Positions 8,014-58,080 of a stretch of 64,000 bases of DNA are shown here, piece after piece; position 1 is the first letter of the stretch; each line of letters begins with the position of its first letter. The notes beneath the pieces were generated by a model that saw only the letters and a list, made by a program, of their open reading frames with translations, made no database searches and had not been told where the DNA came from. The stretch spans positions 62,001 through 126,000 of the forward strand of contig NIVC01001319.1 in assembly GCA_002269645.1 (NCBI GenBank), given 5' to 3'. Position numbers and translations under genes: made by a program. Source of the DNA: Macrostomum lignano. Taxonomy: Eukaryota.

Positions 8014-9435
<1,422 letters not shown>

Positions 9436-10742
9436 CGAGGGATACTCCAAAAGTTTTGCAATTCAACCACTTGCGCAAGTCGCACAATCTTCAAAACCAA
9501 CTCTCTGTACAATAAACATGTACATAGTCCCCACCTCAATTTTCAAGTGAATTCATACATATACGCCTGCTCAGCCCCCAGTCAAAGTCAGAGACTCCTT
9601 AACTGTACAGCTGCAGCCATGGAATTGAATCGTGAGCAGAATCGGCTACTAATTTGGTACTGCCACAAGCGAAAGCTCACGGCGCTTGAGACTCATGCCG
9701 AGCTACTAGCAACATTGGAGGCTCAAGCGCCGTCATATGCTACGGTTACACGCTGGTACCGCGAGTTCCAGGCCGGCAGGACCAGCTTTTCTGACGACCC
9801 CCGGCCCGGGAGACCTCCGACAGCAGCGACGGAGGAAAACATCGCTGCAGTGCAGGAGCCGATTCATCAGGATCCGCGAATCACCACGGACATGCTAGCT
9901 ATGAATGTCGGCATTGGATCGGCAGCGGTCGATACGATTCTACACGATCACCTGAGAGTCAGGAAGCTTTGTGCCCGATGGATACCCCACATCCTGACAG
10001 ATGCTCAGAAACAGGCCCGCAGGGAGTTCTGTCAGTTTCTCATCGATCGATATGAGCACGGGAGCCATCAGCGCCGCTCTGAGGTCATCACTGGTGATGA
10101 GACGTTTCTCTATCATTTTGACGTCGAGACAAAGCGCAGCAGTGCAGAGTGGGTGCCGAAAGGTGGTCAACGACCCCTGAAAGCAAGGCGGTCCCGGTCC
10201 CAGGGCAAGCGGATGTTTGCCATCTTCTTCGACTCACAAGGCGTGGTGGCGATGGTGAAGCTGGAGGGTCAAGCTACAGTCACTGCTCGATGGTACACTG
10301 AAGAGTGCTTGCCAGTCGTGATCGACAGCGTGACCCAGAGGGCGCCAAGGACGGGAATGCGAGGGCAGAAACTTCACCATGACAACGCCCCCGCCCACAC
10401 GGCTGCTGCAACTCGAGCGTTCCTGGACCAAGAGGGCATTTCAACACTACCACACCCGCCCTACTCACCAGACCTCGCCCCCTGCGACTTCTGGCTCTTT
10501 CCAGAAATCAAAAAGTCGCTTAGGGGGCACAGGTTTCAGTCCGACGAGGAGCTGGAGCAGGCGGCGAAGGAGGCGATTGACGGCATCCCAATTGAAGACT
10601 TCCAGGGCTTGATGAACAAGTGGCTCGGACGACGCACAAGTGTTTGCAGTTCCGGGGAGCCTACTTTGAAGGATTGTAATAGAAAAGTTTGGCAAAATTA
10701 ACTTTAAATAGTTGAATTGCAAAACTTTTAGAGTATCCCTCG
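9436..10742 (+). mobile_element. Tc1/mariner DNA transposon (DD34D mariner), 1307 bp
   Basis: 32-bp TIRs CGAGGGATACTC(C/T)AAAAGTTTTGCAATTCAAC at 9436-9467 and 10711-10742 (1 mismatch); TA target duplication at 9434-9435 and 10743-10744; internal transposase. Confidence 0.97.
9619..10701 (+). CDS. Mariner transposase with an apparent 1-nt frameshift near the C-terminus
   Basis: ATG at 9619; N-terminal HTH region; WIPHILT (WVPHEL motif), TGDET, HHDNAPAH and HPPYSPDLAPCD (DD34D). The usual end HKCLQFRGAYFEGL* lies in another frame, with TAA at 10677-10679. Confidence 0.95.
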   Translation: MELNREQNRLLIWYCHKRKLTALETHAELLATLEAQAPSYATVTRWYREFQAGRTSFSDDPRPGRPPTAATEENIAAVQEPIHQDPRITTDMLAMNVGIGSAAVDTILHDHLRVRKLCARWIPHILTDAQKQARREFCQFLIDRYEHGSHQRRSEVITGDETFLYHFDVETKRSSAEWVPKGGQRPLKARRSRSQGKRMFAIFFDSQGVVAMVKLEGQATVTARWYTEECLPVVIDSVTQRAPRTGMRGQKLHHDNAPAHTAAATRAFLDQEGISTLPHPPYSPDLAPCDFWLFPEIKKSLRGHRFQSDEELEQAAKEAIDGIPIEDFQGLMNKWLGRRTSVCSSGEPTLKDCNRKVWQN

Positions 10743-16800: not shown

Positions 16801-16986
16801 AGCGGCAGCCGACGGCAGGAAGGCATCCGGAGGCAGCAGGAGGCTGTCATCCAGCGAGGAGGAAACATCGACGGCGGCAAAGCTGGTTGCCATGGGCAAC
16901 TGCGGTGCGGAATGAGACTCGGGATCGCAATAGTAGTAATTATTATTATTTTGGTTGGTTCGCTGTTTGTCTAAGAAAGCGGCCAT
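13889..16986 (-). CDS. Coiled-coil protein resembling CCHCR1/HCR; join(16600..16986,15547..15780,14689..14991,13889..14347), ~460 aa
   Basis: All junctions are phase 0 with GT-AG sites (CGG|GTGAGC, ACG|GTAAGT, CTGTAG|GAG, CGCAG|CTG); the exon 3 donor AAG|GTGCAG is weak. Heptad-rich protein. WRPRLYKALVQAEAE and REQAKLAAALAQSERR recall CCHCR1 segments (WREKVFALMVQLK, REHAKAVVSLRQIQR) from memory only. Confidence 0.75.
14360..14640. repeat. ~19-20-bp intronic minisatellite (GAGATTGATGGACTGGGGT)
   Basis: Fills the last intron up to the acceptor. Confidence 0.9.
15060..15570. repeat. 33-bp minisatellite spanning the exon 2/intron 2 junction
   Basis: Minus-strand unit AGACAGGCAGCTGAGACAGACG-GTAGGTAGGGC; period 33 (TACCG at 15478, 15511, 15544). 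Confidence 0.95.
15830..16540. repeat. ~52-bp intronic minisatellite (TAGATCTACATGTGTCTATAGATGCCTGTCAT...)
   Basis: Regular units at 15830-16100, degenerating afterwards. Confidence 0.85.
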
Positions 16987-17339
16987 TGTGGGGATGCTCT
17001 GGTCTCTCTGAAAGCGAGTTCAATATTTCATCTATTAATTCTGTTATTTAATGTTAATTCTATTAATTCAGAAAGAATGTAAAAAAAGAGTATAACAATA
17101 AAAACTATCCTGGCGCAAAAATCGACTTTTATATGATTATTCTTTCGTTATTAATTACGTTTTAAAACGCTTGGATTGGAAAAATGCATCATTATAGATC
17201 TAGTATAAAACCATGAAAATACCGTAGAAGTGAGAGGGGAGGCTTCAATAGAAGAGAGGGCAGGGAGTGAAGTATAGAGCAGAGGTGAGAAAGCCCAGTC
17301 AGAATTTAGACAGGTTAAAAACCACAAGTCCTCAGACAG

Positions 17340-17425
17340 GACACAGTCAGACGACAGACAAAGACAGACAGACACAGATAGATGGACAGACAGACTCAGA
17401 TAGATGGACAGACAGACAGACAGAC

Positions 17426-17472
<47 letters not shown>

Positions 17473-17630
17473 GGCAGACAGACAGACAGACAGACAGACA
17501 GGCAGACAGACAGACAGACAGACACAGACAGACAGGCAGGCAGACAGACAGACAGACAGACAGGCAGGCAGACAGGCAGGCAGACAGACAGACAGACAGA
17601 CAGGCAGGCAGACAGGCAGACAGACAGGCA
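17340..17630. repeat. (GACA)n microsatellite
   Basis: Direct reading; lies between MRM1 and the CCHCR1-like gene. Confidence 0.97.
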
Positions 17631-17658
17631 AAGCGCAAAACTCCGCAGTCCGGAGGCC

Positions 17659-18912
17659 TCAGGCCGCAGCAGACCGCAGCCAGCCCGAGACGCAGTGCAG
17701 CAGGATGCCGGCCGCCACTCCCACATTCAGATGCGGCATGGCGCAGGCGGCGCCAGCTTGTGGAATCCGCAGCACCAGGTTGCAGAGGCTCAGAAGCTCA
17801 GCTGACAGGCCGGAGCCCTCGCTGCCAAGCAGCAGAAGCACCGGACCGCTGGGCGGATGCGGCAGCAGGTCCGACAGCCGATCGACGCCGGCGCAAGGCA
17901 CTCCAGGGGCGCCGCCATCGCCTCCCGAGCTGCCTAGCGCCAGCCAGCCAGCCTGGCGCCATTGGCGCACAAACTCAGCGCTGCTGGCGGGCAGGGCGCG
18001 CAAGTCCGTGGCCTCCAGAGCGCCGCAGCTCACTTTGGAGACCACTGGCAGAGGGGGGCAGCTGTGGGTGCCCGGTATGAGCACCGGGCTGACACCGTAG
18101 AACAGGCAGGTGCGGAGCAGACTGCCGAAGTTAAGGATGTCCACCACCTGCGGGTGCGTGCTGATTCATGTGATCTTGCCCATTCTTCAATGCATCTCTT
18201 GCCGATTCTCTCCAATGCATCTCTTGCCGATTCTCTCCCCTTCATCTCTTCCCCATTCTCCCCTTCATCTCTTCCCCATTCTCCCCTTCATCTCTTCCCC
18301 ATTCTCCCCTTCATCTCTTCCCCATTCTCCCCTTCATCTCTTCCCCATTCTCCCCTTCATCTCTTCCCCATTCTCCCCTTCATCTCTTCCCCATTCTCCC
18401 CTTCATCTCTTCCCCATTCTCCCCTGTATCTCTTCCCCATTCTCCCCTTCATCTCTTCCCCATTCTACCCTGCATCTCTTCCCCACCTGGTCCAGCAGCA
18501 CACACAGCCGACTCGCCGCCAGCTCAGAGCGGCAGTCGGAGGCACAGCCGGGCAGCACAGGCACAGGGAAGTGTCCGCACCGCAGCGCGAATCCCTGATG
18601 CGCCCGACCCCGGCACAGAGCGGCCAGTTCGCGCCTGTCAGCGTACCTGACCAGGTGAGCATAGCTGGCAGCGATGAGCTGGCGCAGCTCGGCCGAGCTG
18701 GAGCTGTCGCAGCCGAAGTCTTCAATGACGTCGCTTTGCCCTTGGTGCCGAATGTCAACGTAGATTTCGTCAATTTGACGACGGCGAGACAACAGCGCCT
18801 GCCAGACCGGGTGAATGCCGTACACCAGCTCGGAGCCGCCGCCGCCGCTGTTGCTGAACAACCTGCGGCACAGCAGCAGCGACAGTCGGGCAGCTGACGT
18901 TCGCAGTAGCAG
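17659..18912 (-). CDS. MRM1: Mitochondrial rRNA 2'-O-methyltransferase, SpoU/TrmH SPOUT family; join(18487..18912 or 19050, 17659..18147)
   Basis: ELVYGIHPV N-terminal substrate-binding motif, HQG motif, LDQVVDILNFGSLLRT (SPOUT motif 1), LLGSEGSGL (motif 2), IPQ...LNVGVAAGILLH (motif 3). Phase-0 intron CAG|GTGGGG...CGCAG|GTG. Arg-rich N-terminal leader. Confidence 0.88.
18180..18485. repeat. 23-bp intronic minisatellite (TTCATCTCTTCCCCATTCTCCCC)
   Basis: Fills the MRM1 intron starting at the donor. Confidence 0.95.
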
Positions 18913-19263
18913 CTGGAGAAAAAGGGCTGTCTGAAGAAGCCGGTCGGTGAAACATTGGAGATTCGAAAGTTGGAATGTGACGGTGGCCCAGCAACTGAGG
19001 ATCTGGGATGCTGGCCAAGCAACTGAGGATCTGGGAGGCTGGCACAGCATCTACCTTTCTAGAACTAATCACAAGCCACAAGCACAGGTAGAGAGGCTCT
19101 CTAAATAATATGAAAGTAACGAACAAGCGCAGAGACAGTGCAATCCAGCTAAAAACACGCTCAACAGCGTCAGCCGTCAGCCCGTGTATTTCATGCTCAA
19201 TCAAGAACCTGCCCTCGCAATCTATCATCAAGTCAGTCCCGTCTAGTCAAGCTTAACCTCGCA

Positions 19264-19626
19264 CTACTCGGCCTCAACATTGATGGTCTGCTTGCCCTTG
19301 AACTCGGCGCAGGGCACGTAGGAGACCAGGGTGTACAGCTTGTGCGCGCTGTCCTCGTCTTCGTTGCGCTTCCTGGCCAGGCGGACGCGGACGCGGAACG
19401 GCACATTGCGGACGCCCTGGCTCCACACGAACTTGTTCAGCCGGGTGTCCAGCCGCACGTCCGGGGTGCCCATCATTCGCTCGGCAAATTTGCGAATCTC
19501 CGTCATTGCACGCGGTGCCCGGCGCTTGAAACCGACGCCGTGAATGCGCTTGTGCAGGTTGATGGTGTACTCCCGGGTCACCACGTCTTTTAGGGCGCTC
19601 TTTTTCTTCTCACGTCGGGGAGCCAT
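19264..19626 (-). CDS. RPL31: 60S ribosomal protein L31 (eL31), 120 aa, uninterrupted CDS
   Basis: [26 protein letters not shown]...[49 protein letters not shown] is characteristic eL31; intact start and stop. Confidence 0.98.
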
Positions 19627-19799
19627 GGACTGGCGGGCTGGGAATTGGGGGATTTTTGTTCTGTTTCACATTGCTGCCACTTCAGTTAGAATCTCTAGGC
19701 TGAATTCAGACCTTGCAGTATTTAATTATAACTTTCCAAGTGTTACTGTTAGTAGAATATATGACAAAGAAGAGCGCTGCAAATGTTTTTGGGCTGTGT

Positions 19800-19801
19800 T
19801 C

Positions 19802-19854
<53 letters not shown>

Positions 19855-19879
19855 CACAGACAGACAGACAGACAGACAT

Positions 19880-19954
<75 letters not shown>

Positions 19955-19955
19955 C

Positions 19956-19990
<35 letters not shown>

Positions 19991-19991
19991 C

Positions 19992-20062
<71 letters not shown>

Positions 20063-20072
20063 CAGACAGACA
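19800..20072. repeat. (GACA)n microsatellite
   Basis: Direct reading. Confidence 0.97.
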
Positions 20073-31996: not shown

Positions 31997-34693
31997 TTAT
32001 AGTTCTTCGATTAGCCGTCTTGGGGGTATGCCTTTATTCATTCGACCAGATCGCCGGGCTTGCGGGTGCTGGACCCTTGTGGTGGGCTCCAGGTCAATGT
32101 CGACCGTCGACGCCTGGGCCGGCCTGAAGGGAACCAGGTTCCGTGCAGTCCAAACTTTTCCATTGTCGAGGCGATAGGTGAATCTGCCCAAAACTTCTTG
32201 AATGAGGAAGGGTGACGTAAATGGTGATTTGCCTTTCGGCACATGTGGGAGTCGGATGCGCACCATGTCGTTCAGTTTGAAATGTTGCCGAGTACTCGTT
32301 CCGGCTCCAGTTGCTTGCGGGTCGCTAGAATCGCAGCTCTTTAGCTCCTCCGCAATTGGCTTCTCAATTTCTAGTTTACGGGGCTGAAACTTTGTTCGGA
32401 TATCCCGCCCTAGCAGCAGTCGTGCTGGTGAGTCGCCGTCTTCGTTAGGCGTCGTCCGATAGCTGCAGATGACTTGCTGCATTCCCTCTTCGAAGCTTCT
32501 CTTATCCGCTTCAAAGGTTTGCGCAGCATGCTTAAGTGTCCGGTTAAAAACTTCTACTTTACCATTTCTCCTTGGCTCATATAGCGGAACGCAGTCATGC
32601 CTGATGTCGCGCGAGGCGAGGAAGTTTTTCATTTCAGTGGAGACGAAGCTGCTTCCATTGTCGGACACCAGGACATCCGGGTTTCCAAAACGGTCGAATG
32701 TTTCCGTCAGCCACTTGATAATCTTCGCCGATCTGATGTCTCCAGTCAGGAGAATTTCAGGGTAGGACGAGTAGTAGTCTATCAAGGCAACAATAAATCG
32801 CTGAGTTTGAGGAGCTATCGCGAATGGGCCAGAGATGTCGATTGCCAGCTTTGACCACGGGCGCTCAGGCTTTTGTATAGAATTCCCGTCTGGTACAATG
32901 ACTCTATGGGACTTTGCGCTGTCCTGACAAGCTAGGCAATGCTTGACGTAGTTATTGATTGCTCTGTCCATATCTGGCCACCAGTAAGCAGATCGCAGGA
33001 GACGCTTCATCCTCACAATGCCGGGGTGTCCTTCATGCGCGCGTTTTAGTATTTGCGGTTGTAGTTTAGAAGGCGGCACAATTTGTTCGCCACGAAATAA
33101 AATGTTCTTGTCAATCGTCAGTTCATCCTGGACTTGTCGAAAGGCACTAGCTTCCGATCGTTTGTCGATAGGTCTGGAGAGTCGCGTAGATTCCATTACA
33201 ATCTGCAATAGCTCATCGGTCTTCGTCAGTTCTTGCAAGTTCTGCATATTTATGTTAATTGCACTGCTGACTGCAAGGATGCTCTTGACCGTATTTTCGT
33301 TGTCCATATCGACATCTCTTATTCCGTCGTTAATGGGGAGCCGCGAAAGGGCATCAGCCACCTTGTTGGTGCTTCCTGGCTTGTAGATAATATCGTAACT
33401 GAATTCGGACAGTCTTACAAGCCAGCGAGTGAATTTAGCTGATTTTGTCTTATTAGTGTGGTGTCGAAGAAGACTTGTGAGCGCTGAATGATCGGTCTGC
33501 AGGGTGAACTGCCGTCCAAGCAGATATTTGGCAAAATGCTCACATGCCCAGACGCAAGCGAGGGCTTCGCGCTCGTTCACTGCGTAGTTTCGTTCCCTAT
33601 CAGACAGTGTGTGGGACGCGAAAGAGATAGGTACTTCGTTACCATTCGGCTGTCGTTGCGAAAGGACCGATACTTCGGCAGCCGTGTCGAGGAGAGCGCT
33701 GTAGCTGCCTCTCTTGCCTACAAGGGTGACTTCGACGGACGGCGTCTCGTGTCTGCTGACCAGTCTCACCTTCTCGCGGACATGGTTGACGCTCTTCTTC
33801 TGGGTTCTCCTCTGGGATATTATACACTGCGCTGCAAAATGGTTAGGTTTGCCACATCCTTTGCACAATTTTCCAAGGGCTGGACACTTTGGGTCACGAT
33901 AGAGATGAGTGTTGGATCCGCAACCCATGCACTGCTTATTATGTTGTTTTCCCTTGTCAAAGCGTGCGGGTGGGGCACCGGCATCTGCTTTCCGTCGACG
34001 TGGCGGCCCACTTTTAGAGCTCGGCTGGCTTTGCACTTGCTGAACTGGGGCTGGAGCGCCGCTTCGGATTATCTGGCCGGTCTCGGTGGCTGCTTCATCG
34101 GCCCGCATAGCGGTCAGAAACGTCTGCAGATCGATGGCTTGCTCAGTTAATAGCTTCTCCTGGGTGCTCTTTGACGCGCAGCCGATGACAAGCTGCATTG
34201 CCAGTTGGCGGTCTTCGCCGGCTCCGTACTCGCAGTCCGTGATTAGCGTGCGAAGGGCAGTAAAGTAGTCATTTACCGACTCGCCCGTTTCTTGCTTGCG
34301 GCGTCGAAACTCATATTCGGCTCGGACGGGGTTTTTCGCCGTTGAAAATATTGGCTTCAGCTCATCGACATACTCTGTGAAGCTGGAGTTCTCTTTGTCC
34401 TTCACGCAGTGTGCGTAGAGAATTCGTCTTCCTTCAGACCCCAAAGACGTACGCAGAAATGCTTTCTTAAAAGCCTCCGAGAGCTGTGTGCCTGTTGTCG
34501 TCTCTGTAAGGTAGTAGAAATCCGATACCTCTCTTTGCCAGATGTCCCACTTGGTTGTCGGATCGCCAGGTAGCTCCAGAAACTTGGACGGTTGTGGTAT
34601 TGAGACGCGGATTGCTTGGTGATTCGTCGTCGAGGCCAATGGTTCTCGGCTCGTATTCGGCTTTCCTACCGGCGGTGGCGTCTTTGGCGGCAT
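31997..34693 (-). CDS. Gag / partial protease / partial RNase H / integrase polyprotein, ~898 aa
   Basis: Gag with CKGCGKPNHFAAQC knuckle; LLDTAAEVSVLS joined directly to EVPISFASHTLSDRERNY...TDHSAL (RNase H); HEGHPG...CLAC zinc finger; integrase D,D35E (IDISGP, SDNG, NGKVE). No RT motifs. Confidence 0.93.
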   Translation of the reverse strand: MPPKTPPPVGKPNTSREPLASTTNHQAIRVSIPQPSKFLELPGDPTTKWDIWQREVSDFYYLTETTTGTQLSEAFKKAFLRTSLGSEGRRILYAHCVKDKENSSFTEYVDELKPIFSTAKNPVRAEYEFRRRKQETGESVNDYFTALRTLITDCEYGAGEDRQLAMQLVIGCASKSTQEKLLTEQAIDLQTFLTAMRADEAATETGQIIRSGAPAPVQQVQSQPSSKSGPPRRRKADAGAPPARFDKGKQHNKQCMGCGSNTHLYRDPKCPALGKLCKGCGKPNHFAAQCIISQRRTQKKSVNHVREKVRLVSRHETPSVEVTLVGKRGSYSALLDTAAEVSVLSQRQPNGNEVPISFASHTLSDRERNYAVNEREALACVWACEHFAKYLLGRQFTLQTDHSALTSLLRHHTNKTKSAKFTRWLVRLSEFSYDIIYKPGSTNKVADALSRLPINDGIRDVDMDNENTVKSILAVSSAININMQNLQELTKTDELLQIVMESTRLSRPIDKRSEASAFRQVQDELTIDKNILFRGEQIVPPSKLQPQILKRAHEGHPGIVRMKRLLRSAYWWPDMDRAINNYVKHCLACQDSAKSHRVIVPDGNSIQKPERPWSKLAIDISGPFAIAPQTQRFIVALIDYYSSYPEILLTGDIRSAKIIKWLTETFDRFGNPDVLVSDNGSSFVSTEMKNFLASRDIRHDCVPLYEPRRNGKVEVFNRTLKHAAQTFEADKRSFEEGMQQVICSYRTTPNEDGDSPARLLLGRDIRTKFQPRKLEIEKPIAEELKSCDSSDPQATGAGTSTRQHFKLNDMVRIRLPHVPKGKSPFTSPFLIQEVLGRFTYRLDNGKVWTARNLVPFRPAQASTVDIDLEPTTRVQHPQARRSGRMNKGIPPRRLIEEL

Positions 34694-34703
34694 CGGTTCG
34701 CAA

Positions 34704-34716
34704 ATCCTCGTCGCCA
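34704..34716 (-). promoter_or_regulatory. Primer-binding site complementary to tRNA-Ser(GCU) 3' end
   Basis: TGGCGACGAGGAT 2 nt inside the 5' LTR; matches the animal tRNA-Ser(GCU) end AUCCUCGUCGCCA (from memory). Confidence 0.8.
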
Positions 34717-36559
34717 ATTGATGTGTTTTGAAATGAAATCGTAGTGTTAATTCGTAAAGTAATTTGTATATTTATTTTCACTCCGAAGAGTGGAATCGTA
34801 AGCAAGCGCAGTTCTGAGAAAACAAAGTTCGTCTGGGCCGTCTCTCTTTCTAGAGAGCAAACGTTAGGAGGTTAGGCCATAGATGTGCTTCGACTAAACC
34901 ACACATCAATTTGGTTGCCTAGACAACTGGGTTCGAATTTAATCCTTAACCCGAACAGTGGTCTCTTGCATTGTGCACCGCACCGAAATATTTATTCCAA
35001 ATGCTTATTTAAAACATTTACTCAGTCTTGCTCATAATTGCTTAATTTGGTTTATCACCTTGCCCACCTTTTTTAATGAACTGAAAATGAAGTAGCAATC
35101 TTGCAATTGCATTTTTGGGCCAAGTGTCCACTCATCCAGGTAACTGAGGGGTTAATGAATGGTCGCGAATTTTGGGCGCTTTGTGCCCCGATGAGTAAGC
35201 GCCGCCGCCTCCTCGTGTCAGTCTGACCCCCTTGTGGATAGAGAATTTAATTGGGTTATTTGTCCCATCCTTGTTACTCTCCGGTCGGCACTGCGTATTC
35301 CGATAATTGAGCCACTTAGAAAAGCAAATAAAAATCTCATTCCAAAATACCACTAAAATCAAACCACAATATAGCTAGTAAATGTTGTTCCAGAGAGGGA
35401 AATGAGTCTAGTTCCTTCTCTAAGAACCTTGATATCTTTCCTTTTAACAGGATGACCGAGCAGCCAGCACTGCCTGAGGATCGGGATCTGGAGCTCTGAC
35501 GAGCCACCCAGAAGGTGGAGCTGCTGCGCTGGATACGGAGGTTTGGCATCTCTGCGCCCGAAATAGAATCAGCACGGCAGAGGTCCCCTGCCTAAACGTT
35601 GGGAAGACGGCGGATGAAATCGCCAAGCAGGCCCGCAACACCCGAAGATCCGCCCAACGACGCCTCAATCGACACTTAAAGGCAGAGGCGGCGAAAGAGG
35701 CCAAGCGGACGTCGTCAGGAAACCCGTCGGCAAACCAGGCAACGGAGTCCGTGGGTCGACCCGGGTCTTTCCGGATCTCGCCTATAGCAGAAGCATCAGT
35801 CGAGCGAATCCAGCGGCTGTGGGCCGTGATGCCAACGTCGGCTGCGCAGATTCAGGAGGAGATACCTCTGCCAAAGGTTGCACCACCAGCGATTGCGCTA
35901 CCTAGGGTCCTGGCCGAGCGACAGACTCTGCAGTGCAGTGACAACCTGACCTTGCTGCCGTAGTGATTGAAATTATTTGGTTTGTCACACTTTGTAATTG
36001 AGCCTGTCAAATGTTTTTTTTATTCTGTGAGCGAGCTAATCAATTGCTAATCCCTGTAACTGCATCCACTTAATCCGCTAATCTCGTCATTGACTATAAC
36101 TACTTTATTAACTTTCATGACTGCTTTGGTGCAGTAACCCTTATTGTCGAACTAATTAAGTATATTTACTTTCGTATGGGAGTGGTGTAACGTGCTAAGT
36201 TTTATGTGAAGTTTCCCTTGCTCGAGGGATATTAATTAACAGTGTCATCCGTGCTCTTATAGTAGGTCGTCGATGTATATTGACAATTATTTTGGTAATA
36301 ATAATACTAACAGTACTAGAATATATTAATAATGCTATTGACTACTATTGAAATAAAAAAAACGTTACTAATCACTTTATTGGTCAAATTAGTTTTTTTA
36401 GTTTTTTCATTAGTCCAGATCAGAAAAGAGTTGTGGTCACAGTCTCTGTGTATTCTGTAGTTGTGGTAGTGCTCCTGGGATATAACGTAGTATCGTAAAT
36501 AGTAATTAAATATGTATACATAAAAAATGAAAAATCTGTCCTTTTTCGAAAAGAGAGGA

Positions 36560-42830: not shown

Positions 42831-42959
42831 AAGGTTTTGTTTATTTAAACAGTAAGTTGCTTGATGAAGCTATTTCTGATCCAAAATATTAGGGTAGCCT
42901 AAGGATAGTCTGTGCAGAGATAGATAATTGATACAGGTTAAAAGTGAAGATAGGGGGAC

Positions 42960-44690
42960 AGTCTGGTAGATAGGGAGACAAGTTGGTCGATAGGGAGACA
43001 GGTTGGTAGATAGGAAGACAAACTGGTACATGGGGAGACAAGTTGGTAGATAGGGAGACAAGTTGGTAGATAGGGAGACAAGTTGGTAGATACGGAGACA
43101 AGTTGGTAGATAGGGAGACAAGTTGGTAGATAGGGAGACAAGTTGGTAGATAGGGAGACAAGTTGGTAGATAGGGAGACAAGTTGGTAGATAGGGAGACA
43201 AGTTGGTAGATAGGGAGACAAGTTGGTAGATAGGGAGACAAGTTGGTAGATAGGGAGACAAGTTGGTAGATAGGGAGACAAGTTGGTAGATAGGGAGACA
43301 AGTTGGTAGATAGGGAGACAAGTTGGTAGATAGGGAGACAAGTTGGTAGATAGGGAGACAAGTTGGTAGATACGGAGACAAGTTGGTAGATAGGGAGACA
43401 AGTTGGTAGATAGGGAGACAAGTTGGTAGATAGGGAGATAAGTTGGTAGATAGGGAGACAAGTTGGTAGATAGGGAGACAAGTTGGTAGATAGGGAGACA
43501 AGTTGGTAGATAGGGAGACAAGTTGGTAGATAGGGAGACAAGTTGGTAGATAGGGAGACAAGTTAGTAGATAGGGAGACAAGTTGGTAGATAGGGAGACA
43601 AGTTGGTAGATAGGGAGACAAGTTGGTAGATAGGGAGACAAGTTGGTAGATAGGGAGACAAGTTGGTAGATACGGAGACAAGTTGGTAGATAGGGAGACA
43701 AGTTGGTAGATAGGGAGACAAGTTGGTAGATAGGGAGACAAGTTGGTAGATAGGGAGACAAGTTGGTAGATAGGGAGACAAGTTAGTAGATAGGGAGACA
43801 AGTTGGTAGATAGGGAGACAAGTTGGTAGATAGGGAGACAAGTTGGTAGATAGGGAGACAAGTTGGTAGATAGGGAGACAAGTTGGTAGATAGGGAGACA
43901 AGTTGGTAGATAGGGAGACAAGTTGGTAGATAGGGAGACAAGTTTGTAGATAGGGAGACAAGTTGGTAGATACGGAGACAAGTTGGTAGATAGGGAGACA
44001 AGTTGGTAGATAGGGAGACAAGTTGGTAGATAGGGAGACAAGTTGGTAGATAGGGAGACAAGTTGGTAGATAGGGAGACAAGTTGGTAGATAGGGAGACA
44101 AGTTGGTAGATAGGGAGACAAGTTGGTAGATACGGAGACAAGTTGGTAGATAGGGAGACAAGTTGGTAGATAGGGAGACAAGTTGGTAGATACGGAGACA
44201 AGTTGGTAGATAGGGAGACAAGTTGGTAGATAGGGAGACAAGTTGGTAGATAGGGAGACAAGTTGGTAGATACGGAGACAAGTTGGTAGATAGGGAGACA
44301 AGTTGGTAGATAGGGAGACAAGTTGGTAGATAGGGAGACAAGTTGGTAGATAGGGAGACAAGTTGGTAGATAGGGAGACAAGTTGGTAGATAGGGAGACA
44401 AGTTGGTAGATAGGGAGACAAGTTGGTAGATAGGGAGACAAGTTGGTAGATAGGGAGACAAGTTGGTAAATAGGGAGACAAGTTGGTAGATAGGGAGACA
44501 AGTTGGTAGATACGGAGACAAGTTGGTAGATAGGGAGACAAGTTGGTAGATACGGAGACAAGTTGGTAGATAGGGAGACAAGTTGGTAGATACGGAGACA
44601 AGTTGGTAGATAGGGAGACAAGTTGGTAGATAGGGAGACAAGTTGGTAGATAGGGAGACAAGTTGGTAGATAGGAAGACAAACCGGTAGA
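42960..44690. repeat. 20-bp minisatellite (AGTTGGTAGATAGGGAGACA), ~85 units
   Basis: Nearly invariant; the main variant is TACGG for TAGGG. Confidence 0.98.
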
Positions 44691-45361: not shown

Positions 45362-46408
45362 CTACAGAAGCAGCATCTCGATCTCCTTCAGCGAGTAGTA
45401 GAGAAAAAAGGGTAGCTTCCAAATGACTCCCTGTGCATAAGGTCCTCCGATGGCAACAGATGCGTCTCTGTACTTTCCGTTCGGGTGGGTGGCGAAACAG
45501 TTGCTAAACCACCAGGCTCCTTTAAACATTGTTGCGCAGTTACTAGGATGGGTGTCGTGCTCGGCGTCCTTCGTACTGAACTGCGCGCCGTTGCTCCTGG
45601 GAGCGAGGCTGTCGCCGATGCCGCCGCTGCCGGAGAAGCCGGACACGCTCAGCCGGTAGTTGTCTGACTCGGGACCCACGGAGAAGCTGGAGTACTCGGC
45701 CCAGTGCTCAGAGTCGTTCCACGCCTTCATCAGGATCCTCAGCTTCCGAGGACCAGAAGCAGTGAGAGCGTGGAGAGAGTTCAGGCCTGGGAAGATGCGG
45801 ACGTCATGGCGGTGTTTGTCATTGAAGTCCGAGTTGGAAAAGGAAGCGAATGGAGCAGATCTGGGATGCACTCACCGATCCAGTAGTTTCCGTCGGGTCC
45901 CTCGCCGAACTCGCTCTGGTACTGAGTCCAGTTGCGGTAAAAGTCCACTGAGCCGGACACCCTGTGCTGCACGGTGGTCCAGCAGTCACTGCCGGCTGTC
46001 TGCAAGGTGACACAGCAGGTGTGTCAGCTTTTCTACTCCGCGTTAAAGCGTGGCTGTAATGCTGACACATCTGACTGAGTGACTCACCCACACTCGCTGA
46101 GCTCCCTTGTTCGCATTTCGGCACTTCCTGCAGTGGCTCAGGCCCAGGCGGCATTTGAACTGAGCACACAGGCCGGAGCTGGCGTTGAACGCCACCAGCT
46201 GCAAAGCGGAGTCGCTGTTGGCAGCGACAATGCAGTCGACCTCATTCTGAGCTGAGTGTGACCTCACGGCCTCGTAGTCGGAAAGGCTTTTAAGACTCGG
46301 CCACCACCGTCGTCCGGAAGAAGAGGAGGCAGCTTCGGTCACGTGACGCGGGACTGCAGCGAGCAGCAGCAGCAGCAGAGCGACTTGACGAGCGGGTTGG
46401 AGCTGCAT
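45362..46408 (-). CDS. Secreted fibrinogen-related (FReD, ficolin/angiopoietin-like) protein; join(46088..46408,45876..45999,45362..45786), 289 aa
   Basis: Signal peptide [10 protein letters not shown]; [18 protein letters not shown]...FG...YWIGL, NYRLSV, FSTKD, CA...GAWWFSNC...NGKY are FReD motifs; two GTGAGT-AG introns of 88 and 89 bp preserve the frame. Confidence 0.93.
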
Positions 46409-51834: not shown

Positions 51835-54800
51835 ATGACATTCCATCAATCTGCTTGGCTACATTCATTTGACAGACAAGTTAACCTGGGTCAGCAATAC
51901 TCAGTAGAGTCGGACAGCTTTATTGAGAGTTTGCATGGCGATTCCTCCCCTGGAGGAGACTTCAGCTTCAAGGATGCAGTCAGCAACAAAAAAATAGAAA
52001 TATTCGTTGACAGTTCGGATACATTTTTGAGCGATGTCGCTGCTCTCGGCCTGACTGCTCTGCAAGCTCTGAAGCTGATTTGTCATGGATCGTCAAGTAA
52101 TGTCAATTGTTCGCTTCAAGACCTGCTGCATTACCTGTGGGACAACTGCGACTTCTCCAAGCAGCTAGTGATAGGCGTTCTCCAAGAAAAATGCGTCTCT
52201 GCCAGTGCAGTTGATCAGGGAGGTGTAAAGCCTGGTGAAGTATCCTGCGTGTCGCAAGGGTGGCTGCTGTGTGGAATCGTCAAAGGTAGGACCCTTCGAT
52301 GTCGCATTAAGATATTAAGGCATAAAATATGTGTTGTTTAAACTTTTTACTTAGTTATTTTATGTTTCCTTTTTAGGCGATGGCGACATTAAAACGGCCA
52401 AGATCAAAACATTTTTAAATGGCACCGTGGTACTAATGGATCTGTCTGAGTTTAAAGACTCCCTCGAAAAAATGGATGCTGTTCCTGAGGGAGCACTTCA
52501 TGCTGCCAATCTGTTTAAAGTTTTCGATGCCAGCAATCAGCTGCGTTCCGCTCAGGAGTGTAGTACCAGTACAGATGTGCTGCAGCGGCTATACGAAGGT
52601 CAGAAGGTGGCTCGAAGTATTGAGGAGCTTCTGGGCTACAAAGTGCTACACGATGTTCCGTATCTGCGAGAAACACTGACTACAGCTTTGCAGTTTGTGC
52701 AGAATAAGGTTACGATGAACAAAGTTCGAGTTAGAAACAGCACCCAGACACCCGCATCTCTGAAGGACTGCATTCCTTTCGTTCCCAGCTTTAGCTGGTT
52801 GCCAATGCTGGGTGAGTTTCTCGATGTCCTAACAGCTATATCACAGCTGTCAAACTCGAAAGCTTTTGAACCGGCTGATGGTAAGACCTGCTGTACCGTG
52901 TCGTTGGTATTTCCAACCGATGCGCCAAAGTTGCTGCAATGGGAGAAGCACTGGGAGAATTTCGATCTTGCGACTGCTCTCAAAGATTGTACTCGAAGTT
53001 TTCAAGCTATGCTGAGGGTAATTCAGGCTAATGATCATGGCGATTGGCAGCTTTGCATAAAGATGCAACAGCAAGCCGAAAAGATAATTCATGCTCACAT
53101 TACACTTGAACGTCTTGACTCAAAATTATGCTCTATTGAGAGTTTTTTGGTATTTCATGCTGTTGAGTCCGTGCGTTCTGCGTCAAATGCAATTGAGTTG
53201 CTATTTTCACCTCTGAGTGCTGCTGATTTTAAAGAGAATGAAATTCAAGGTGTGTCGATTCGCTACAAGGAAGAACAGAGCAATGAGTGGACGGAAGTAA
53301 TCAAAATCTTTGGCCCAAACGTTGGAACTGCTCTTCTTGAGCAGTTGAAAATGGGTACCGCCTATCAGATGTCCTATCAGACCATTCGGATGTTCGGTCG
53401 CTGCGAAGTGAAAAATATGCCAATGGTGACAACATTGGCATGCGCCGCTCCGGACATTGCTTCAATTACGCAGGTGTCCCCATTTCGTGTGGAACTAGAA
53501 CTGACTCCGCCTGTATTGCAGCAGCAAAAAGCCCGTCTGGTTGGTTATCAAATCACTGTGCTCAAACAGGGACACAGCTCAGGCCATGAGACTTATGTTA
53601 AGACTGATTCTTCGCAAAAGACTGTTCCCATCGAAGTCAATGGAGATGGCTGCTATACATTTTCTGTTTCAGCAGTGCTCTCAGATGACTCTGTTGGAGA
53701 GCAGAGCAAGAATGTCACCCTAGAAGTGAAATCGACAGCAGCGGACCGAATGAAGTATAATTTGCTCAACTCTTCTCTACTACTGGATTCTGAGGCTAAG
53801 CTGCCTCTTGAGTACGAGTTGCAAATGGACCAGACGTTCTGGGATCCAGTGCACCAAGTTCGAAAAATGGAGCTTGGACGCGATAGCTTGTCCGGAATTG
53901 ACGAAAAAGTGATTATGATCGTCGGTGAAACTGGCTCTGGAAAAACTACCCTGATCAACTCGATGGTCAACTACATCTTCGGAGTAAAGTACGAAGACCC
54001 GTTTCGCTTCAGAATCATTACAGATCCGAAGGAGAAGAAACTTAGGACATCTCAGTCAATGAGTCAGACTCAATGGGTCACATCCTACACATTCCACCAT
54101 CGCGATGGCTGTCAGCAACCTTGCTCGTTGACTCTGGTGGACACGCCAGGATTTGGTGACACTGGCGGCATCATGAACGACAAGAAGATTGTCGACCGAA
54201 TCAGAGAGTTCTTCTCTTCCCCAGGCGGCATTGACCACTTGGATGCTGTGGGCTTTGTGGTGCCATCGAGTGTCGCCAGACTGACGCCAACGCAGCGATA
54301 CGTTTTCGACTCGATCCTCTCTCTGTTCGGTAAGGATATTGGCGACAATATCTACATGCTAATCACATTTGCTGATGCAAATGTACCTCCTGTGCTCGAG
54401 TCCCTCAAGGAAGCGAGGATCTCCTACAATTTACACATCAAATTCAACAACTCTGCTGTATTTGCGAAGAGTCAGGAAATGGACCAGATGAGCCAAATGT
54501 TCAACAAGATGTTCTGGGATATGGGAATGAACAGCTTCCAAGGATTTTTCTCCCATTTGATGAAGATTACGGCAAAGAGCCTGACCCTGACCAAAGATGT
54601 TCTAAGTGAGCGGCAGAGACTGCAGACTCACTTAATTGCTATCAAGGCGGAGATCGACCAAGGTCTGAGCAAGTTGAATCAGCTGGAGCGCGAAATATCC
54701 GTTATCAAGGCTCACCAGTCAGATTTGGACCGCAACCGCAACTTCACATACACAGTTGTGGAAGACACAGCAGTTTGCCAGCCGATTCCTTCCGGAACTT

Positions 54801-55465
54801 ACATCACGAACTGTCTAACGTGCAACAGGACGTGTCACTATCCATGTGGAATTCCAGATGATAAAGACAAAGCCGGCTGCGCGGCGATGACAAATGGCAA
54901 TTGCCACGTGTGCAAAAGTGGTTGTGTGTGGTCGGTCCACAAGAACATGTCATACCAAATCGTTATCACTCAGCAAACTGTCACGAAAACGTCGGATGAC
55001 CTAAAAGGTCGCTACACCGATGCGGAGGGGAAACTGCTGTCTGCCAAGCAGCTGGCGCAGCGGGTGTACGAAGAGTATCTCGGGACGAAGGCCAACGTGA
55101 TGCAGCTGGTCAAGGAGAGCAAAAAGTGCATCGAGCGCCTGCAGCAGATCGCTCTGAAGCCTGACCCTCTGAACGAGGTTGACTACATTGACAAGTTGAT
55201 TGATGCCGAGCAGATGAGCAAGAATGATGGGTATTCCGACCGAATCCAACAGCTGCAGGATATTCGAGAGCTCGCTGTTCGAGCTGAGAACCTGAAGAAG
55301 GACGAGCTGCTGAATGTACTGCTGCAGAGCGAGACGCGAGTTTACCGCAGGTACGAAGAGTTTTTTGTAAAGCCAAGCGCCTCTGGCATCACTGCGCACC
55401 TCCGAGGCGGCTTCAAGAGGCTGAAGCGACTGTTCTATGAAGGTGGCGGCCACTCACAGGCTTAG
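51835..55465 (+). CDS. Multidomain P-loop GTPase (AIG1/septin-like) with FN3 repeats; join(51835..52285,52377..55465), ~1179 aa
   Basis: Phase-1 intron AAAG|GTAGGA...TTTTAG|GC of 91 bp joins the two ORFs in frame. G1 GETGSGKT at 53924, G3 DTPGFGD at ~54140, two FN3-like beta segments, coiled coil, and a CLTCNRTCHYPC...C...CHVC...C...H cluster. Confidence 0.9.

Positions 55466-56719: not shown

Positions 56720-58080
<1,361 letters not shown>

What the first reader, a model, noticed from the sequence alone, without database searches (positions are those of the whole stretch)
18850..19102. MRM1 may receive its start codon from the spliced leader
A strong acceptor, CCCTTTTTCTCCAG (AG at 18914-18913), lies directly and in frame before CTG CTA CTG CGA. 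Adding a single AUG there gives M-LLLRTSAARLSLLLCRRLFSNS, which looks like a typical mitochondrial presequence (Arg-rich, no acidic residues, RRLF|S-like cleavage site), as expected for MRM1. No upstream coding exon with a good donor is evident. The only in-frame genomic ATG (19050) would add 46 residues that include a 28-bp duplication and would bury the presequence. Flatworm SLs end in AUG, which is known to act as initiator in Schistosoma. Import of this enzyme would then depend on trans-splicing, and an unspliced or differently spliced form (acceptor at 19101-19102) could be targeted elsewhere.
Basis: partly seen in the sequence, partly recalled or inferred. Interest (0 to 1): 0.75.

Follow-up and report, generated by a model that had tools for sequence, protein, structure and literature searches.

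The report
MRM1 start codon from spliced leader
A flatworm (Macrostomum lignano) gene for a mitochondrial rRNA methyltransferase has no usable start codon of its own and most likely borrows the AUG at the end of the trans-spliced leader, a mechanism already known in flatworms, so this is a well-supported but ordinary new example.

Summary
The sequence features are all present at the stated coordinates. The window is Macrostomum lignano Mlig_3_7, contig NIVC01001319.1 (window x = record x + 62000). Its spliced leader (SL) ends in ATG.

On the minus strand, RPL31, an MRM1/RlmB-type methyltransferase and a third gene lie 350 and about 650 nt apart. Both neighbours are annotated with 5' ends at AG acceptors.

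A paralogous copy (NIVC01000822.1) provides the key test:
- The MRM1 reading frame (305 codons) and the acceptor are conserved.
- ATG 19050 is TTG there.
- The "28-bp duplication" is a minisatellite, 2.4 versus 17.5 copies, which shifts the frame.
- An in-frame TAG lies six codons upstream of the acceptor.

No other ATG could serve. Homology to RlmB begins at residue 28, leaving an Arg-rich, acid-free leader that ends in RLF|S.

Two qualifications apply. A second in-frame acceptor (AG 18932-18931) is equally possible. No RNA reads could be examined. The suggested alternative isoform from acceptor 19102-19101 has no support.

SL-AUG initiation has been known since 2006, so this is a new member of a known kind. 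Confidence is about 0.7 and interest is low to moderate.

The parts
19264..19626 (-). RPL31 (eL31) coding sequence, single exon. It is the upstream gene of the putative operon.
   Evidence: Pfam Ribosomal_L31e, E = 4e-45. The annotated product P0036 is 100% identical and starts RQS-M at 19635, 2 nt after an AG acceptor.
19638..19639 (-). AG of the RPL31 trans-splice acceptor (aattcccAG|cc).
   Evidence: The annotated 5'-partial CDS begins 2 nt downstream. Mlig_3_7 gene boundaries were set from SL-containing reads (PMC5730564).
18914..19263 (-). Interval between the RPL31 stop and the MRM1 acceptor: RPL31 3'UTR plus MRM1 outron, non-coding.
   Evidence: Against the paralog it shows a 7-nt indel, a repeat expansion and 9 substitutions in about 290 nt. 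GC3 is 0.59 against 0.76-0.78 in the MRM1 exons.
19048..19050 (-). The only in-frame genomic ATG upstream of MRM1. It is probably not used.
   Evidence: It is TTG in paralog L004 and out of frame there. It sits at the edge of the minisatellite.
18984..19049 (-).
   Evidence: TRF: period 28, 2.4 copies in the window against 17.5 copies in L004. The period is not a multiple of 3.
18931..18932 (-). AG of alternative candidate trans-splice acceptor A (cttcttcAG|ACAGCC), in frame.
   Evidence: It matches [T/C]TNCAG. SL-AUG here gives MTALFLQLLLRTS... and a 311-codon ORF. In L004 it is TAG, still an AG acceptor and also the in-frame stop.
18913..18926 (-). Candidate trans-splice acceptor B with its pyrimidine tract, CCCTTTTTCTCCAG (AG at 18914-18913).
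   Evidence: It matches [T/C]TNCAG, is in frame, and SL-AUG gives a 305-codon ORF. It is identical in L004.
18856..18912 (-). Codons 2-20 of the predicted presequence, LLLRTSAARLSLLLCRRLF. The proposed MPP cleavage is after RLF, before SNS.
   Evidence: Four Arg, no acidic residue before position 29, and an R-x-F|S (R-3) motif. Homology to RlmB begins only at residue 28.
18487..18912 (-). MRM1 exon 1: presequence plus SpoU_sub_bind domain.
   Evidence: Pfam PF08032. GT donor at 18486-18485. The paralog differs by 2 non-synonymous and 4 synonymous changes in this exon.
18148..18486 (-). MRM1 intron with a 23-nt minisatellite.
   Evidence: TRF: 18174-18485, period 23, 13.4 copies. In the paralog a related array is about 2.5 kb (period 25, 101 copies).
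17659..18147 (-). MRM1 exon 2: SpoU methylase domain, with stop TGA at 17661-17659.
   Evidence: Pfam PF00588, E = 7e-20. Alignment to E. coli RlmB 1gz0 includes the LGSEGSGL and IP..G...LNV motifs.
17004..17010 (-). Acceptor cluster (tttCAGAGAG) of the downstream gene 3, whose ATG is at 16986.
   Evidence: The annotated 5'-partial CDS starts at 17001 in this copy, and directly after ctttcag in the paralog.

Best explanation
RPL31, MRM1 and a third gene on the minus strand form an operon-like unit in Macrostomum lignano.

1. The MRM1 message is released from the precursor by spliced-leader trans-splicing at the acceptor ending at 18913, or at the in-frame one ending at 18931.
2. The 35-nt leader ends in AUG. 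This AUG abuts the first genomic codon in frame and serves as the only initiation codon.
3. The product begins M-LLLRTSAARLSLLLCRRLF|SNS... (or MTALFLQ-LLLR...).
4. This short Arg-rich, acid-free leader acts as a matrix-targeting presequence, probably cut after RLF.
5. It is followed by an RlmB/MRM1-type 2'-O-methyltransferase for the mitochondrial large-subunit rRNA.

Shown here: the sequence layout, the identity of the organism and its SL, conservation of the ORF and acceptor, and loss of every upstream start option in the paralog.

Inferred: that trans-splicing occurs at this site, that the SL AUG is used, and that the protein goes to mitochondria.
For: Organism and SL
- The window is 100% identical to M. 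lignano NIVC01001319.1.
- The SL is CGGTCTCTTACTGCGAAGACTCAATTTATTGCATG, and the trans-splice acceptor motif is [T/C]TNCAG (PMC8629364).
- The last 7 nt, TTGCATG, equal those of the S. mansoni SL. The papers read here cite Cheng et al. 2006 for that SL's terminal AUG initiating translation.

Layout
- The only two motif matches between the RPL31 stop and the conserved domain are at 18931 and 18913, and both are in frame.
- No ATG in any frame lies between 18954 and 18662. The only other in-frame upstream ATG, at 19194, stops after 5 codons. No conserved upstream ATG is followed by a GT donor.

Paralog L004
- The acceptor is identical and the 305-codon ORF is intact, with no indels and 7 synonymous against 5 non-synonymous changes.
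- ATG 19050 is TTG. The 28-nt minisatellite has 17.5 copies against 2.4, which changes the frame. An in-frame TAG lies six codons before the acceptor.

Composition and homology
- GC3 falls from 0.76-0.78 in the exons to 0.59 in the 46-codon 'extension'.
- Homology to E. coli RlmB residue 2 and to animal MRM1 proteins starts at residue 24-28, so the first roughly 27 residues are a non-conserved leader.
- The leader has 4 Arg, no Asp or Glu, and RLF|S.

Context
- The annotated CDSs of both neighbours begin at AG acceptors. In 3 of 4 neighbouring trans-spliced genes examined, the SL AUG would be in frame with the main ORF.
- The distances of 350 and about 650 nt meet the published operon criterion of under 1 kb.
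Against: - No RNA-seq, SL-read or 5'-end data for M. lignano could be reached with these tools, so trans-splicing at this site is inferred, not seen.
- MRM1 is not among the GenBank-annotated genes at either locus. [quoted passage not shown]
- Two in-frame acceptors 18 nt apart cannot be told apart.
- The two copies differ by only 1.3% in the CDS. Intactness and a dN/dS of roughly 0.2 are therefore weak proof that both are functional, and the paralog could be a young pseudogene.
- The SL AUG has a weak context (U at -3, C at +4). For RPL31 it is out of frame, so ribosomes must often bypass it.
- CUG codons at positions 1 and 3 could in principle initiate.
- The presequence call rests on simple heuristics, not a trained predictor.
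Confidence: 0.7

Rival explanations
1. MRM1 is translated from the genomic ATG at 19050 on a transcript that is not trans-spliced at 18913/18931, giving a protein with 46 extra N-terminal residues.
For: The frame is open from ATG 19050 to the exon in this copy, with a stop directly upstream.
Against: In the paralog the ATG is TTG, its position is out of frame, and an in-frame TAG follows. Of the 138 nt, 66 are a minisatellite of variable copy number with period 28. GC3 is 0.59, like non-coding sequence. The first 30 residues have only one basic residue. A 46-codon open stretch has a chance probability of about 0.1-0.2.
Confidence: 0.06
2. The acceptor at 18913 (or 18931) is cis-spliced to an upstream exon that carries the ATG.
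For: Acceptor sites are shared between cis- and trans-splicing in flatworms (PMC12582326).
Against: RPL31, complete with its own stop, ends only 350 nt upstream on the same strand. Within those 350 nt the only ATG conserved in both copies (19194) hits a stop after 5 codons, with no GT donor before it. An exon further upstream would have to skip the whole RPL31 gene.
Confidence: 0.06
3. Translation starts at a non-AUG codon (CUG at codon 1 or 3 of the exon) independently of the SL AUG.
For: The exon begins CTG CTA CTG. From general knowledge, CUG is the most efficient non-AUG initiator.
Against: In the paralog the first codon is CTC. If the mRNA is trans-spliced, an in-frame AUG lies directly 5' of these codons and would be met first. 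No evidence for a separate promoter was found.
Confidence: 0.08
4. The locus is a non-functional or non-translated MRM1 remnant, which is why it lacks a start codon and is missing from the GenBank annotation.
For: It is not annotated at either locus. It scores below the curated cutoff for RlmB (90.5 against 160 bits) and is divergent, at most 37% identical to any protein among 1.84 billion representatives.
Against: Both copies keep a 305-codon ORF across two exons with canonical GT-AG, no indels, and more synonymous than non-synonymous changes. SpoU motifs are preserved. GC3 is high, as in other genes here. The annotation filter explains the absence.
Confidence: 0.08

Closest known systems
Flatworm SL 3'-terminal AUG used as initiator methionine. 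Sources: Cheng, Cohen, Ndegwa & Davis 2006 J Biol Chem, as summarised in PMC9851317; example SmSirt7 in PMC3772001; E. granulosus, 143 of 187 SL clusters full length from the SL ATG, in PMC3510090.
   Same: The SL ends in ...UUGCAUG. The acceptor is in frame with the main ORF. No downstream genomic AUG could give the conserved N-terminus, so the SL AUG is required.
   Different: Here it is a free-living macrostomid and a different gene, and it is inferred from DNA and a paralog comparison only. The published cases rest on cDNA and translation assays. [quoted passage not shown]
Echinococcus granulosus thioredoxin glutathione reductase: alternative trans-spliced mRNAs encode mitochondrial and cytosolic variants (Agorio et al. 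2003 J Biol Chem, cited in PMC12582326; paper not held, details not checked).
   Same: Trans-splicing determines whether a protein carries a mitochondrial leader.
   Different: No evidence here for two isoforms. The proposed alternative form is contradicted by the paralog.
MRM1 / Pet56 / bacterial RlmB (SpoU-TrmH 2'-O-methyltransferase of the large-subunit rRNA P-loop guanosine).
   Same: SpoU_sub_bind plus SpoU_methylase architecture. The best NCBIfam family is RlmB, the best PDB hit is E. coli RlmB (1gz0), and the nearest named proteins are animal 'rRNA methyltransferase 1, mitochondrial-like'.
   Different: Very divergent, at most 37% identity. It scores below the RlmB equivalog cutoff and has an unusual motif 1 (DILNFGSLLR instead of DPxNxGAxxR). 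Activity and target were not tested.
M. lignano operons resolved by SL trans-splicing (Ustyantsev & Berezikov 2021, PMC8629364).
   Same: Same-strand genes under 1 kb apart, repeats inflating the intergenic distance, and a YTNCAG acceptor at the downstream genes.
   Different: The polycistronic precursor was not observed here.

Membership tests
SL-AUG-initiated ORF (flatworm SL terminal AUG as initiator) | The organism has an SL RNA whose exon ends in AUG. | tested here: met
   The window is M. lignano NIVC01001319.1. The published SL ends in TTGCATG. No SL gene lies in the window itself.
SL-AUG-initiated ORF (flatworm SL terminal AUG as initiator) | The mRNA is trans-spliced to the SL at the proposed acceptor. 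| not testable with these tools
   No M. lignano RNA reads or transcripts were reachable. The only indirect support is the motif match, the operon context and neighbours annotated from AG acceptors.
SL-AUG-initiated ORF (flatworm SL terminal AUG as initiator) | The SL AUG is in frame with the main ORF with no intervening stop. | tested here: met
   Both candidate acceptors give uninterrupted ORFs of 305 and 311 codons through both exons. The same holds in the paralog.
SL-AUG-initiated ORF (flatworm SL terminal AUG as initiator) | No genomic AUG can supply the conserved N-terminus. | tested here: met
   The paralog has an in-frame TAG six codons upstream and no ATG. The window has a single upstream ATG (19050), which is not conserved and lies in a minisatellite. 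The first in-frame Met downstream is at about codon 281.
SL-AUG-initiated ORF (flatworm SL terminal AUG as initiator) | Ribosomes initiate at the SL AUG. | not testable with these tools
   This needs ribosome profiling, N-terminal proteomics or reporter assays.
MRM1 / RlmB rRNA 2'-O-methyltransferase | SpoU_sub_bind N-terminal domain plus SpoU_methylase (SPOUT) C-terminal domain. | tested here: met
   PF08032 (30.7 bits, cutoff 22.8) and PF00588 (72 bits, cutoff 29.7).
MRM1 / RlmB rRNA 2'-O-methyltransferase | Scores as an RlmB equivalog. | tested here: inconclusive
   TIGR00186 is the best family (E = 1e-25) but scores 90.5 bits against a cutoff of 160. The best PDB hit is RlmB 1gz0. The nearest named proteins are animal MRM1-like.
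MRM1 / RlmB rRNA 2'-O-methyltransferase | Mitochondrial localisation through an N-terminal presequence. | tested here: inconclusive
   Heuristics fit: 4 Arg, 0 acidic residues in the first 28, an R-3 motif RLF|S, and a leader that precedes the start of RlmB homology. No trained predictor or experiment was available.
M. lignano SL-resolved operon | Adjacent same-strand trans-spliced genes with a repeat-adjusted distance under 1 kb. | tested here: met
   RPL31 stop to acceptor is 350 nt. MRM1 stop to the gene 3 acceptor is about 650 nt, including a long (TGTC)n array. Neighbour CDS starts abut AG acceptors.
M. lignano SL-resolved operon | A polycistronic precursor transcript. | not testable with these tools
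   No RNA data were available.

The most novel reading that the evidence does not exclude
Translation, and with it mitochondrial import, of MRM1 in M. lignano is obligatorily coupled to SL trans-splicing. The unprocessed or polycistronic RNA cannot make the enzyme. Two tandem in-frame acceptors 18 nt apart could yield two presequence variants. If this is common among nuclear-encoded mitochondrial proteins of macrostomids, SL trimming during annotation would systematically hide a class of start-codon-less genes, as it did for this one in GenBank.
Probability: 0.6. Interest if true: 0.4.

Novelty: new member of a known kind. Interest (0 to 1): 0.3.

Why it matters
This is a clean, testable case in a transgenesis-capable flatworm of a gene that cannot be translated without the leader's AUG. 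It could be used to measure how efficiently the SL AUG initiates. It also flags an annotation blind spot: pipelines that trim the whole SL, including ATG, leave such genes 5'-partial or drop them. It does not change what is known about trans-splicing.

Tried and rejected
Searches that gave nothing:
- Rfam scan of the window: no hits.
- SL exon searched in the window with up to 3 mismatches: none.
- Homology search with the MRM1 product in the 5.8-billion-protein set: only matches of 33-34% identity at best, from metagenome and Logan sources, and no Macrostomum copy.
- Exhaustive representative search: best hit 37%. No orthologue from another Macrostomum species could therefore be compared.
- Exact look-up of the 120-aa RPL31: not on record, because the annotated product is the 123-aa 5'-partial form.
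- tblastn of MRM1 against the other RPL31 loci L001 and L002: no copy. There RPL31 is followed by RPS21.

Literature limits:
- Supplements of PMC5816591 searched for MRM1 and RPL31: nothing.
- The supplements of PMC5730564 hold no gene table.
- Cheng 2006, Agorio 2003 and Wasik 2015 are not held, so they are cited only through papers that cite them.

Rejected readings:
- The acceptor at 19102-19101 as the source of an alternative isoform: it gives a 12-codon ORF in another frame.
- An upstream exon inside the intergenic region.

Set aside:
- The closest library homologue (L005) turned out to come from a coral metagenome of unknown organism, so it was not used as evidence.

Full report
**Observation.**
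On the minus strand the text is exactly as described.
- CCCTTTTTCTCCAG has its AG at 18914-18913 and is followed in frame by CTG CTA CTG CGA.
- The single in-frame upstream ATG is at 19050, directly preceded by TAG. It would add 46 codons.
- Those codons contain a 28-nt tandem repeat (TRF: 18984-19049, 2.4 copies).
- A further AG lies at 19102-19101.

The gene has two exons, 18912-18487 and 18147-17659. They are joined by a GT-AG intron filled with a 23-nt minisatellite. The product carries SpoU_sub_bind and SpoU_methylase domains.

**Organism and context.**
The upstream ORF (19626-19264) is ribosomal protein eL31. A search with it returned the window's own annotated product and a 97% identical Macrostomum lignano protein. 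Fetching the encoding contigs showed that the window is M. lignano Mlig_3_7, NIVC01001319.1, with window x = record x + 62000. A paralogous copy of the whole locus lies on NIVC01000822.1 (L004).

The M. lignano SL is CGGTCTCTTACTGCGAAGACTCAATTTATTGCATG, and the enriched trans-splice acceptor motif is [T/C]TNCAG (PMC8629364). Its last seven bases match the S. mansoni SL.

MRM1 is not among the GenBank genes at either locus. [quoted passage not shown]

The annotated CDSs of the neighbours are 5'-partial and start at AG acceptors: RPL31 2 nt after cccAG, and gene 3 directly after ctttcAG in the paralog. The same pattern holds for RPS21 and NAC at other loci. This is as expected for gene boundaries set from SL reads.

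RPL31, MRM1 and gene 3 are 350 and about 650 nt apart on one strand. Both distances are inside the published operon criterion.

**Where can translation start?**
Homology to E. coli RlmB residue 2, to the RlmB model and to animal MRM1 proteins begins at residue 24-28, at SELVYGIHPV. The start must therefore lie upstream of that point.
- Between the RPL31 stop and that point, the only matches to the trans-splice motif are AG 18932-18931 and AG 18914-18913. They are 18 nt apart and both in frame.
- There is no ATG in any frame from 18954 to 18662, and no in-frame Met codon until about codon 281.
- The other in-frame upstream ATG (19194) stops after five codons, and no GT donor follows it.

**The paralog test.**
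In L004 the acceptor and the 305-codon ORF are conserved, with no indels and 7 synonymous against 5 non-synonymous changes. Upstream of the acceptor everything that could provide a start is gone.
- ATG 19050 is TTG.
- The 28-nt repeat is expanded to 17.5 copies, which puts that position in another frame.
- CAG 18933-18931 is TAG, an in-frame stop six codons before the acceptor.

GC3 also drops from 0.76-0.78 in the exons to 0.59 in the 46-codon 'extension'. The boundary of constraint therefore sits at the acceptor pair. The TAG in the paralog still ends in AG, so acceptor A remains usable there.

**The leader.**
M-LLLRTSAARLSLLLCRRLF|SNSGGGG has four Arg and no acidic residue before position 29. 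It has an R-x-F|S arrangement that fits the R-3 cleavage rule (the rule is from general knowledge). The 19050 version has one basic residue in its first 30. These are heuristics only.

**Mechanism and rivals.**
The best reading, at about 0.7, runs as follows.
1. SL trans-splicing resolves MRM1 from an RPL31-led precursor.
2. The SL AUG initiates translation.
3. The short leader directs import into mitochondria.

The rivals are each below 0.1:
- use of ATG 19050;
- cis-splicing from an upstream exon;
- CUG initiation;
- a dead gene.

The weak points are these.
- No RNA evidence was available.
- There are two possible junctions.
- Paralog divergence is only 1.3%.
- The AUG has a weak context, and for RPL31 the SL AUG is out of frame, so ribosomes must often bypass it.

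An SL there opens a 12-codon ORF in another frame.

**Comparison and novelty.**
SL-AUG initiation is established in flatworms.
- In S. mansoni, more than 40 cDNAs require it (Cheng 2006, through PMC9851317).
- SmSirt7 takes its ATG from the SL.
- In E. granulosus, 143 of 187 SL clusters are full length from the SL ATG.
- A trans-splicing-dependent mitochondrial/cytosolic pair is cited for E. granulosus TGR.
- Macrostomum workers already note that the SL ATG is a likely start codon.

This is therefore a new member of a known kind. It is useful as a test case and as an annotation warning, but not surprising.

Noticed in passing
window 19626-19639 (minus strand): For RPL31 the SL AUG would be out of frame, with 11 nt between the acceptor and the ATG. 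It would open a 16-codon upstream ORF overlapping the real start. Ribosomes must therefore often skip the SL AUG on this highly expressed mRNA.
   Followed up: partly
L004 15235; L001 11623; L002 12678: In three of four neighbouring trans-spliced genes (gene 3, RPS21, NAC) the SL AUG would be in frame with the genomic ATG, 21-30 nt upstream and with no stop between. This hints at selection for frame, as reported for E. granulosus. The sample is too small to test.
   Followed up: partly
L005 1-330 (Logan contig from ERR14224705, a Tara Pacific coral long-read metagenome): This contig encodes the closest homologue of the MRM1 in the whole representative library (37% identity, E = 3e-43). It also lacks any in-frame ATG between an upstream stop and the conserved domain; the gene caller used TTG. 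It has CTGCAG in frame directly before LRRALSAVLL. The source organism is unknown.
   Followed up: partly
window 18174-18485 and L004 11579-14058: The MRM1 intron minisatellite is 13 copies of 23 nt in one copy of the locus. In the other copy a related array has about 101 copies of 25 nt (2.5 kb).
   Followed up: yes
window 17380-17640, 19820-20070, 56800-57150 and others: Long (TGTC)n/(GACA)n microsatellites flank the genes, including one in the MRM1 3'UTR or intergenic region. Many other minisatellites fill the window, for example 8100-9450 and 42870-44680.
   Followed up: no
window 9547-10701 (+): Intact-looking mariner/Mos1-type transposase ORF (HTH_48, DDE_3, Transposase_1).
   Followed up: partly
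window 31997-34717 (-): LTR-retrotransposon gag-pol ORF of 906 aa with RNase H and integrase domains. No protease or RT core hit was listed.
   Followed up: partly
window 52427-55465 (+): Uninterrupted 1012-aa ORF with a septin/AIG1-like P-loop GTPase domain at about residues 492-650 and a long coiled C-terminal part.
   Followed up: no
window 45362-45871 (-): Exon encoding a fibrinogen C-terminal globular domain (E = 2e-29).
   Followed up: no
L001/L002 10001-11910: A second eL31 paralog (97% identical protein) sits in a different neighbourhood, followed by RPS21 and NAC rather than MRM1. The RPL31-MRM1 linkage is therefore specific to one paralog pair.
   Followed up: partly
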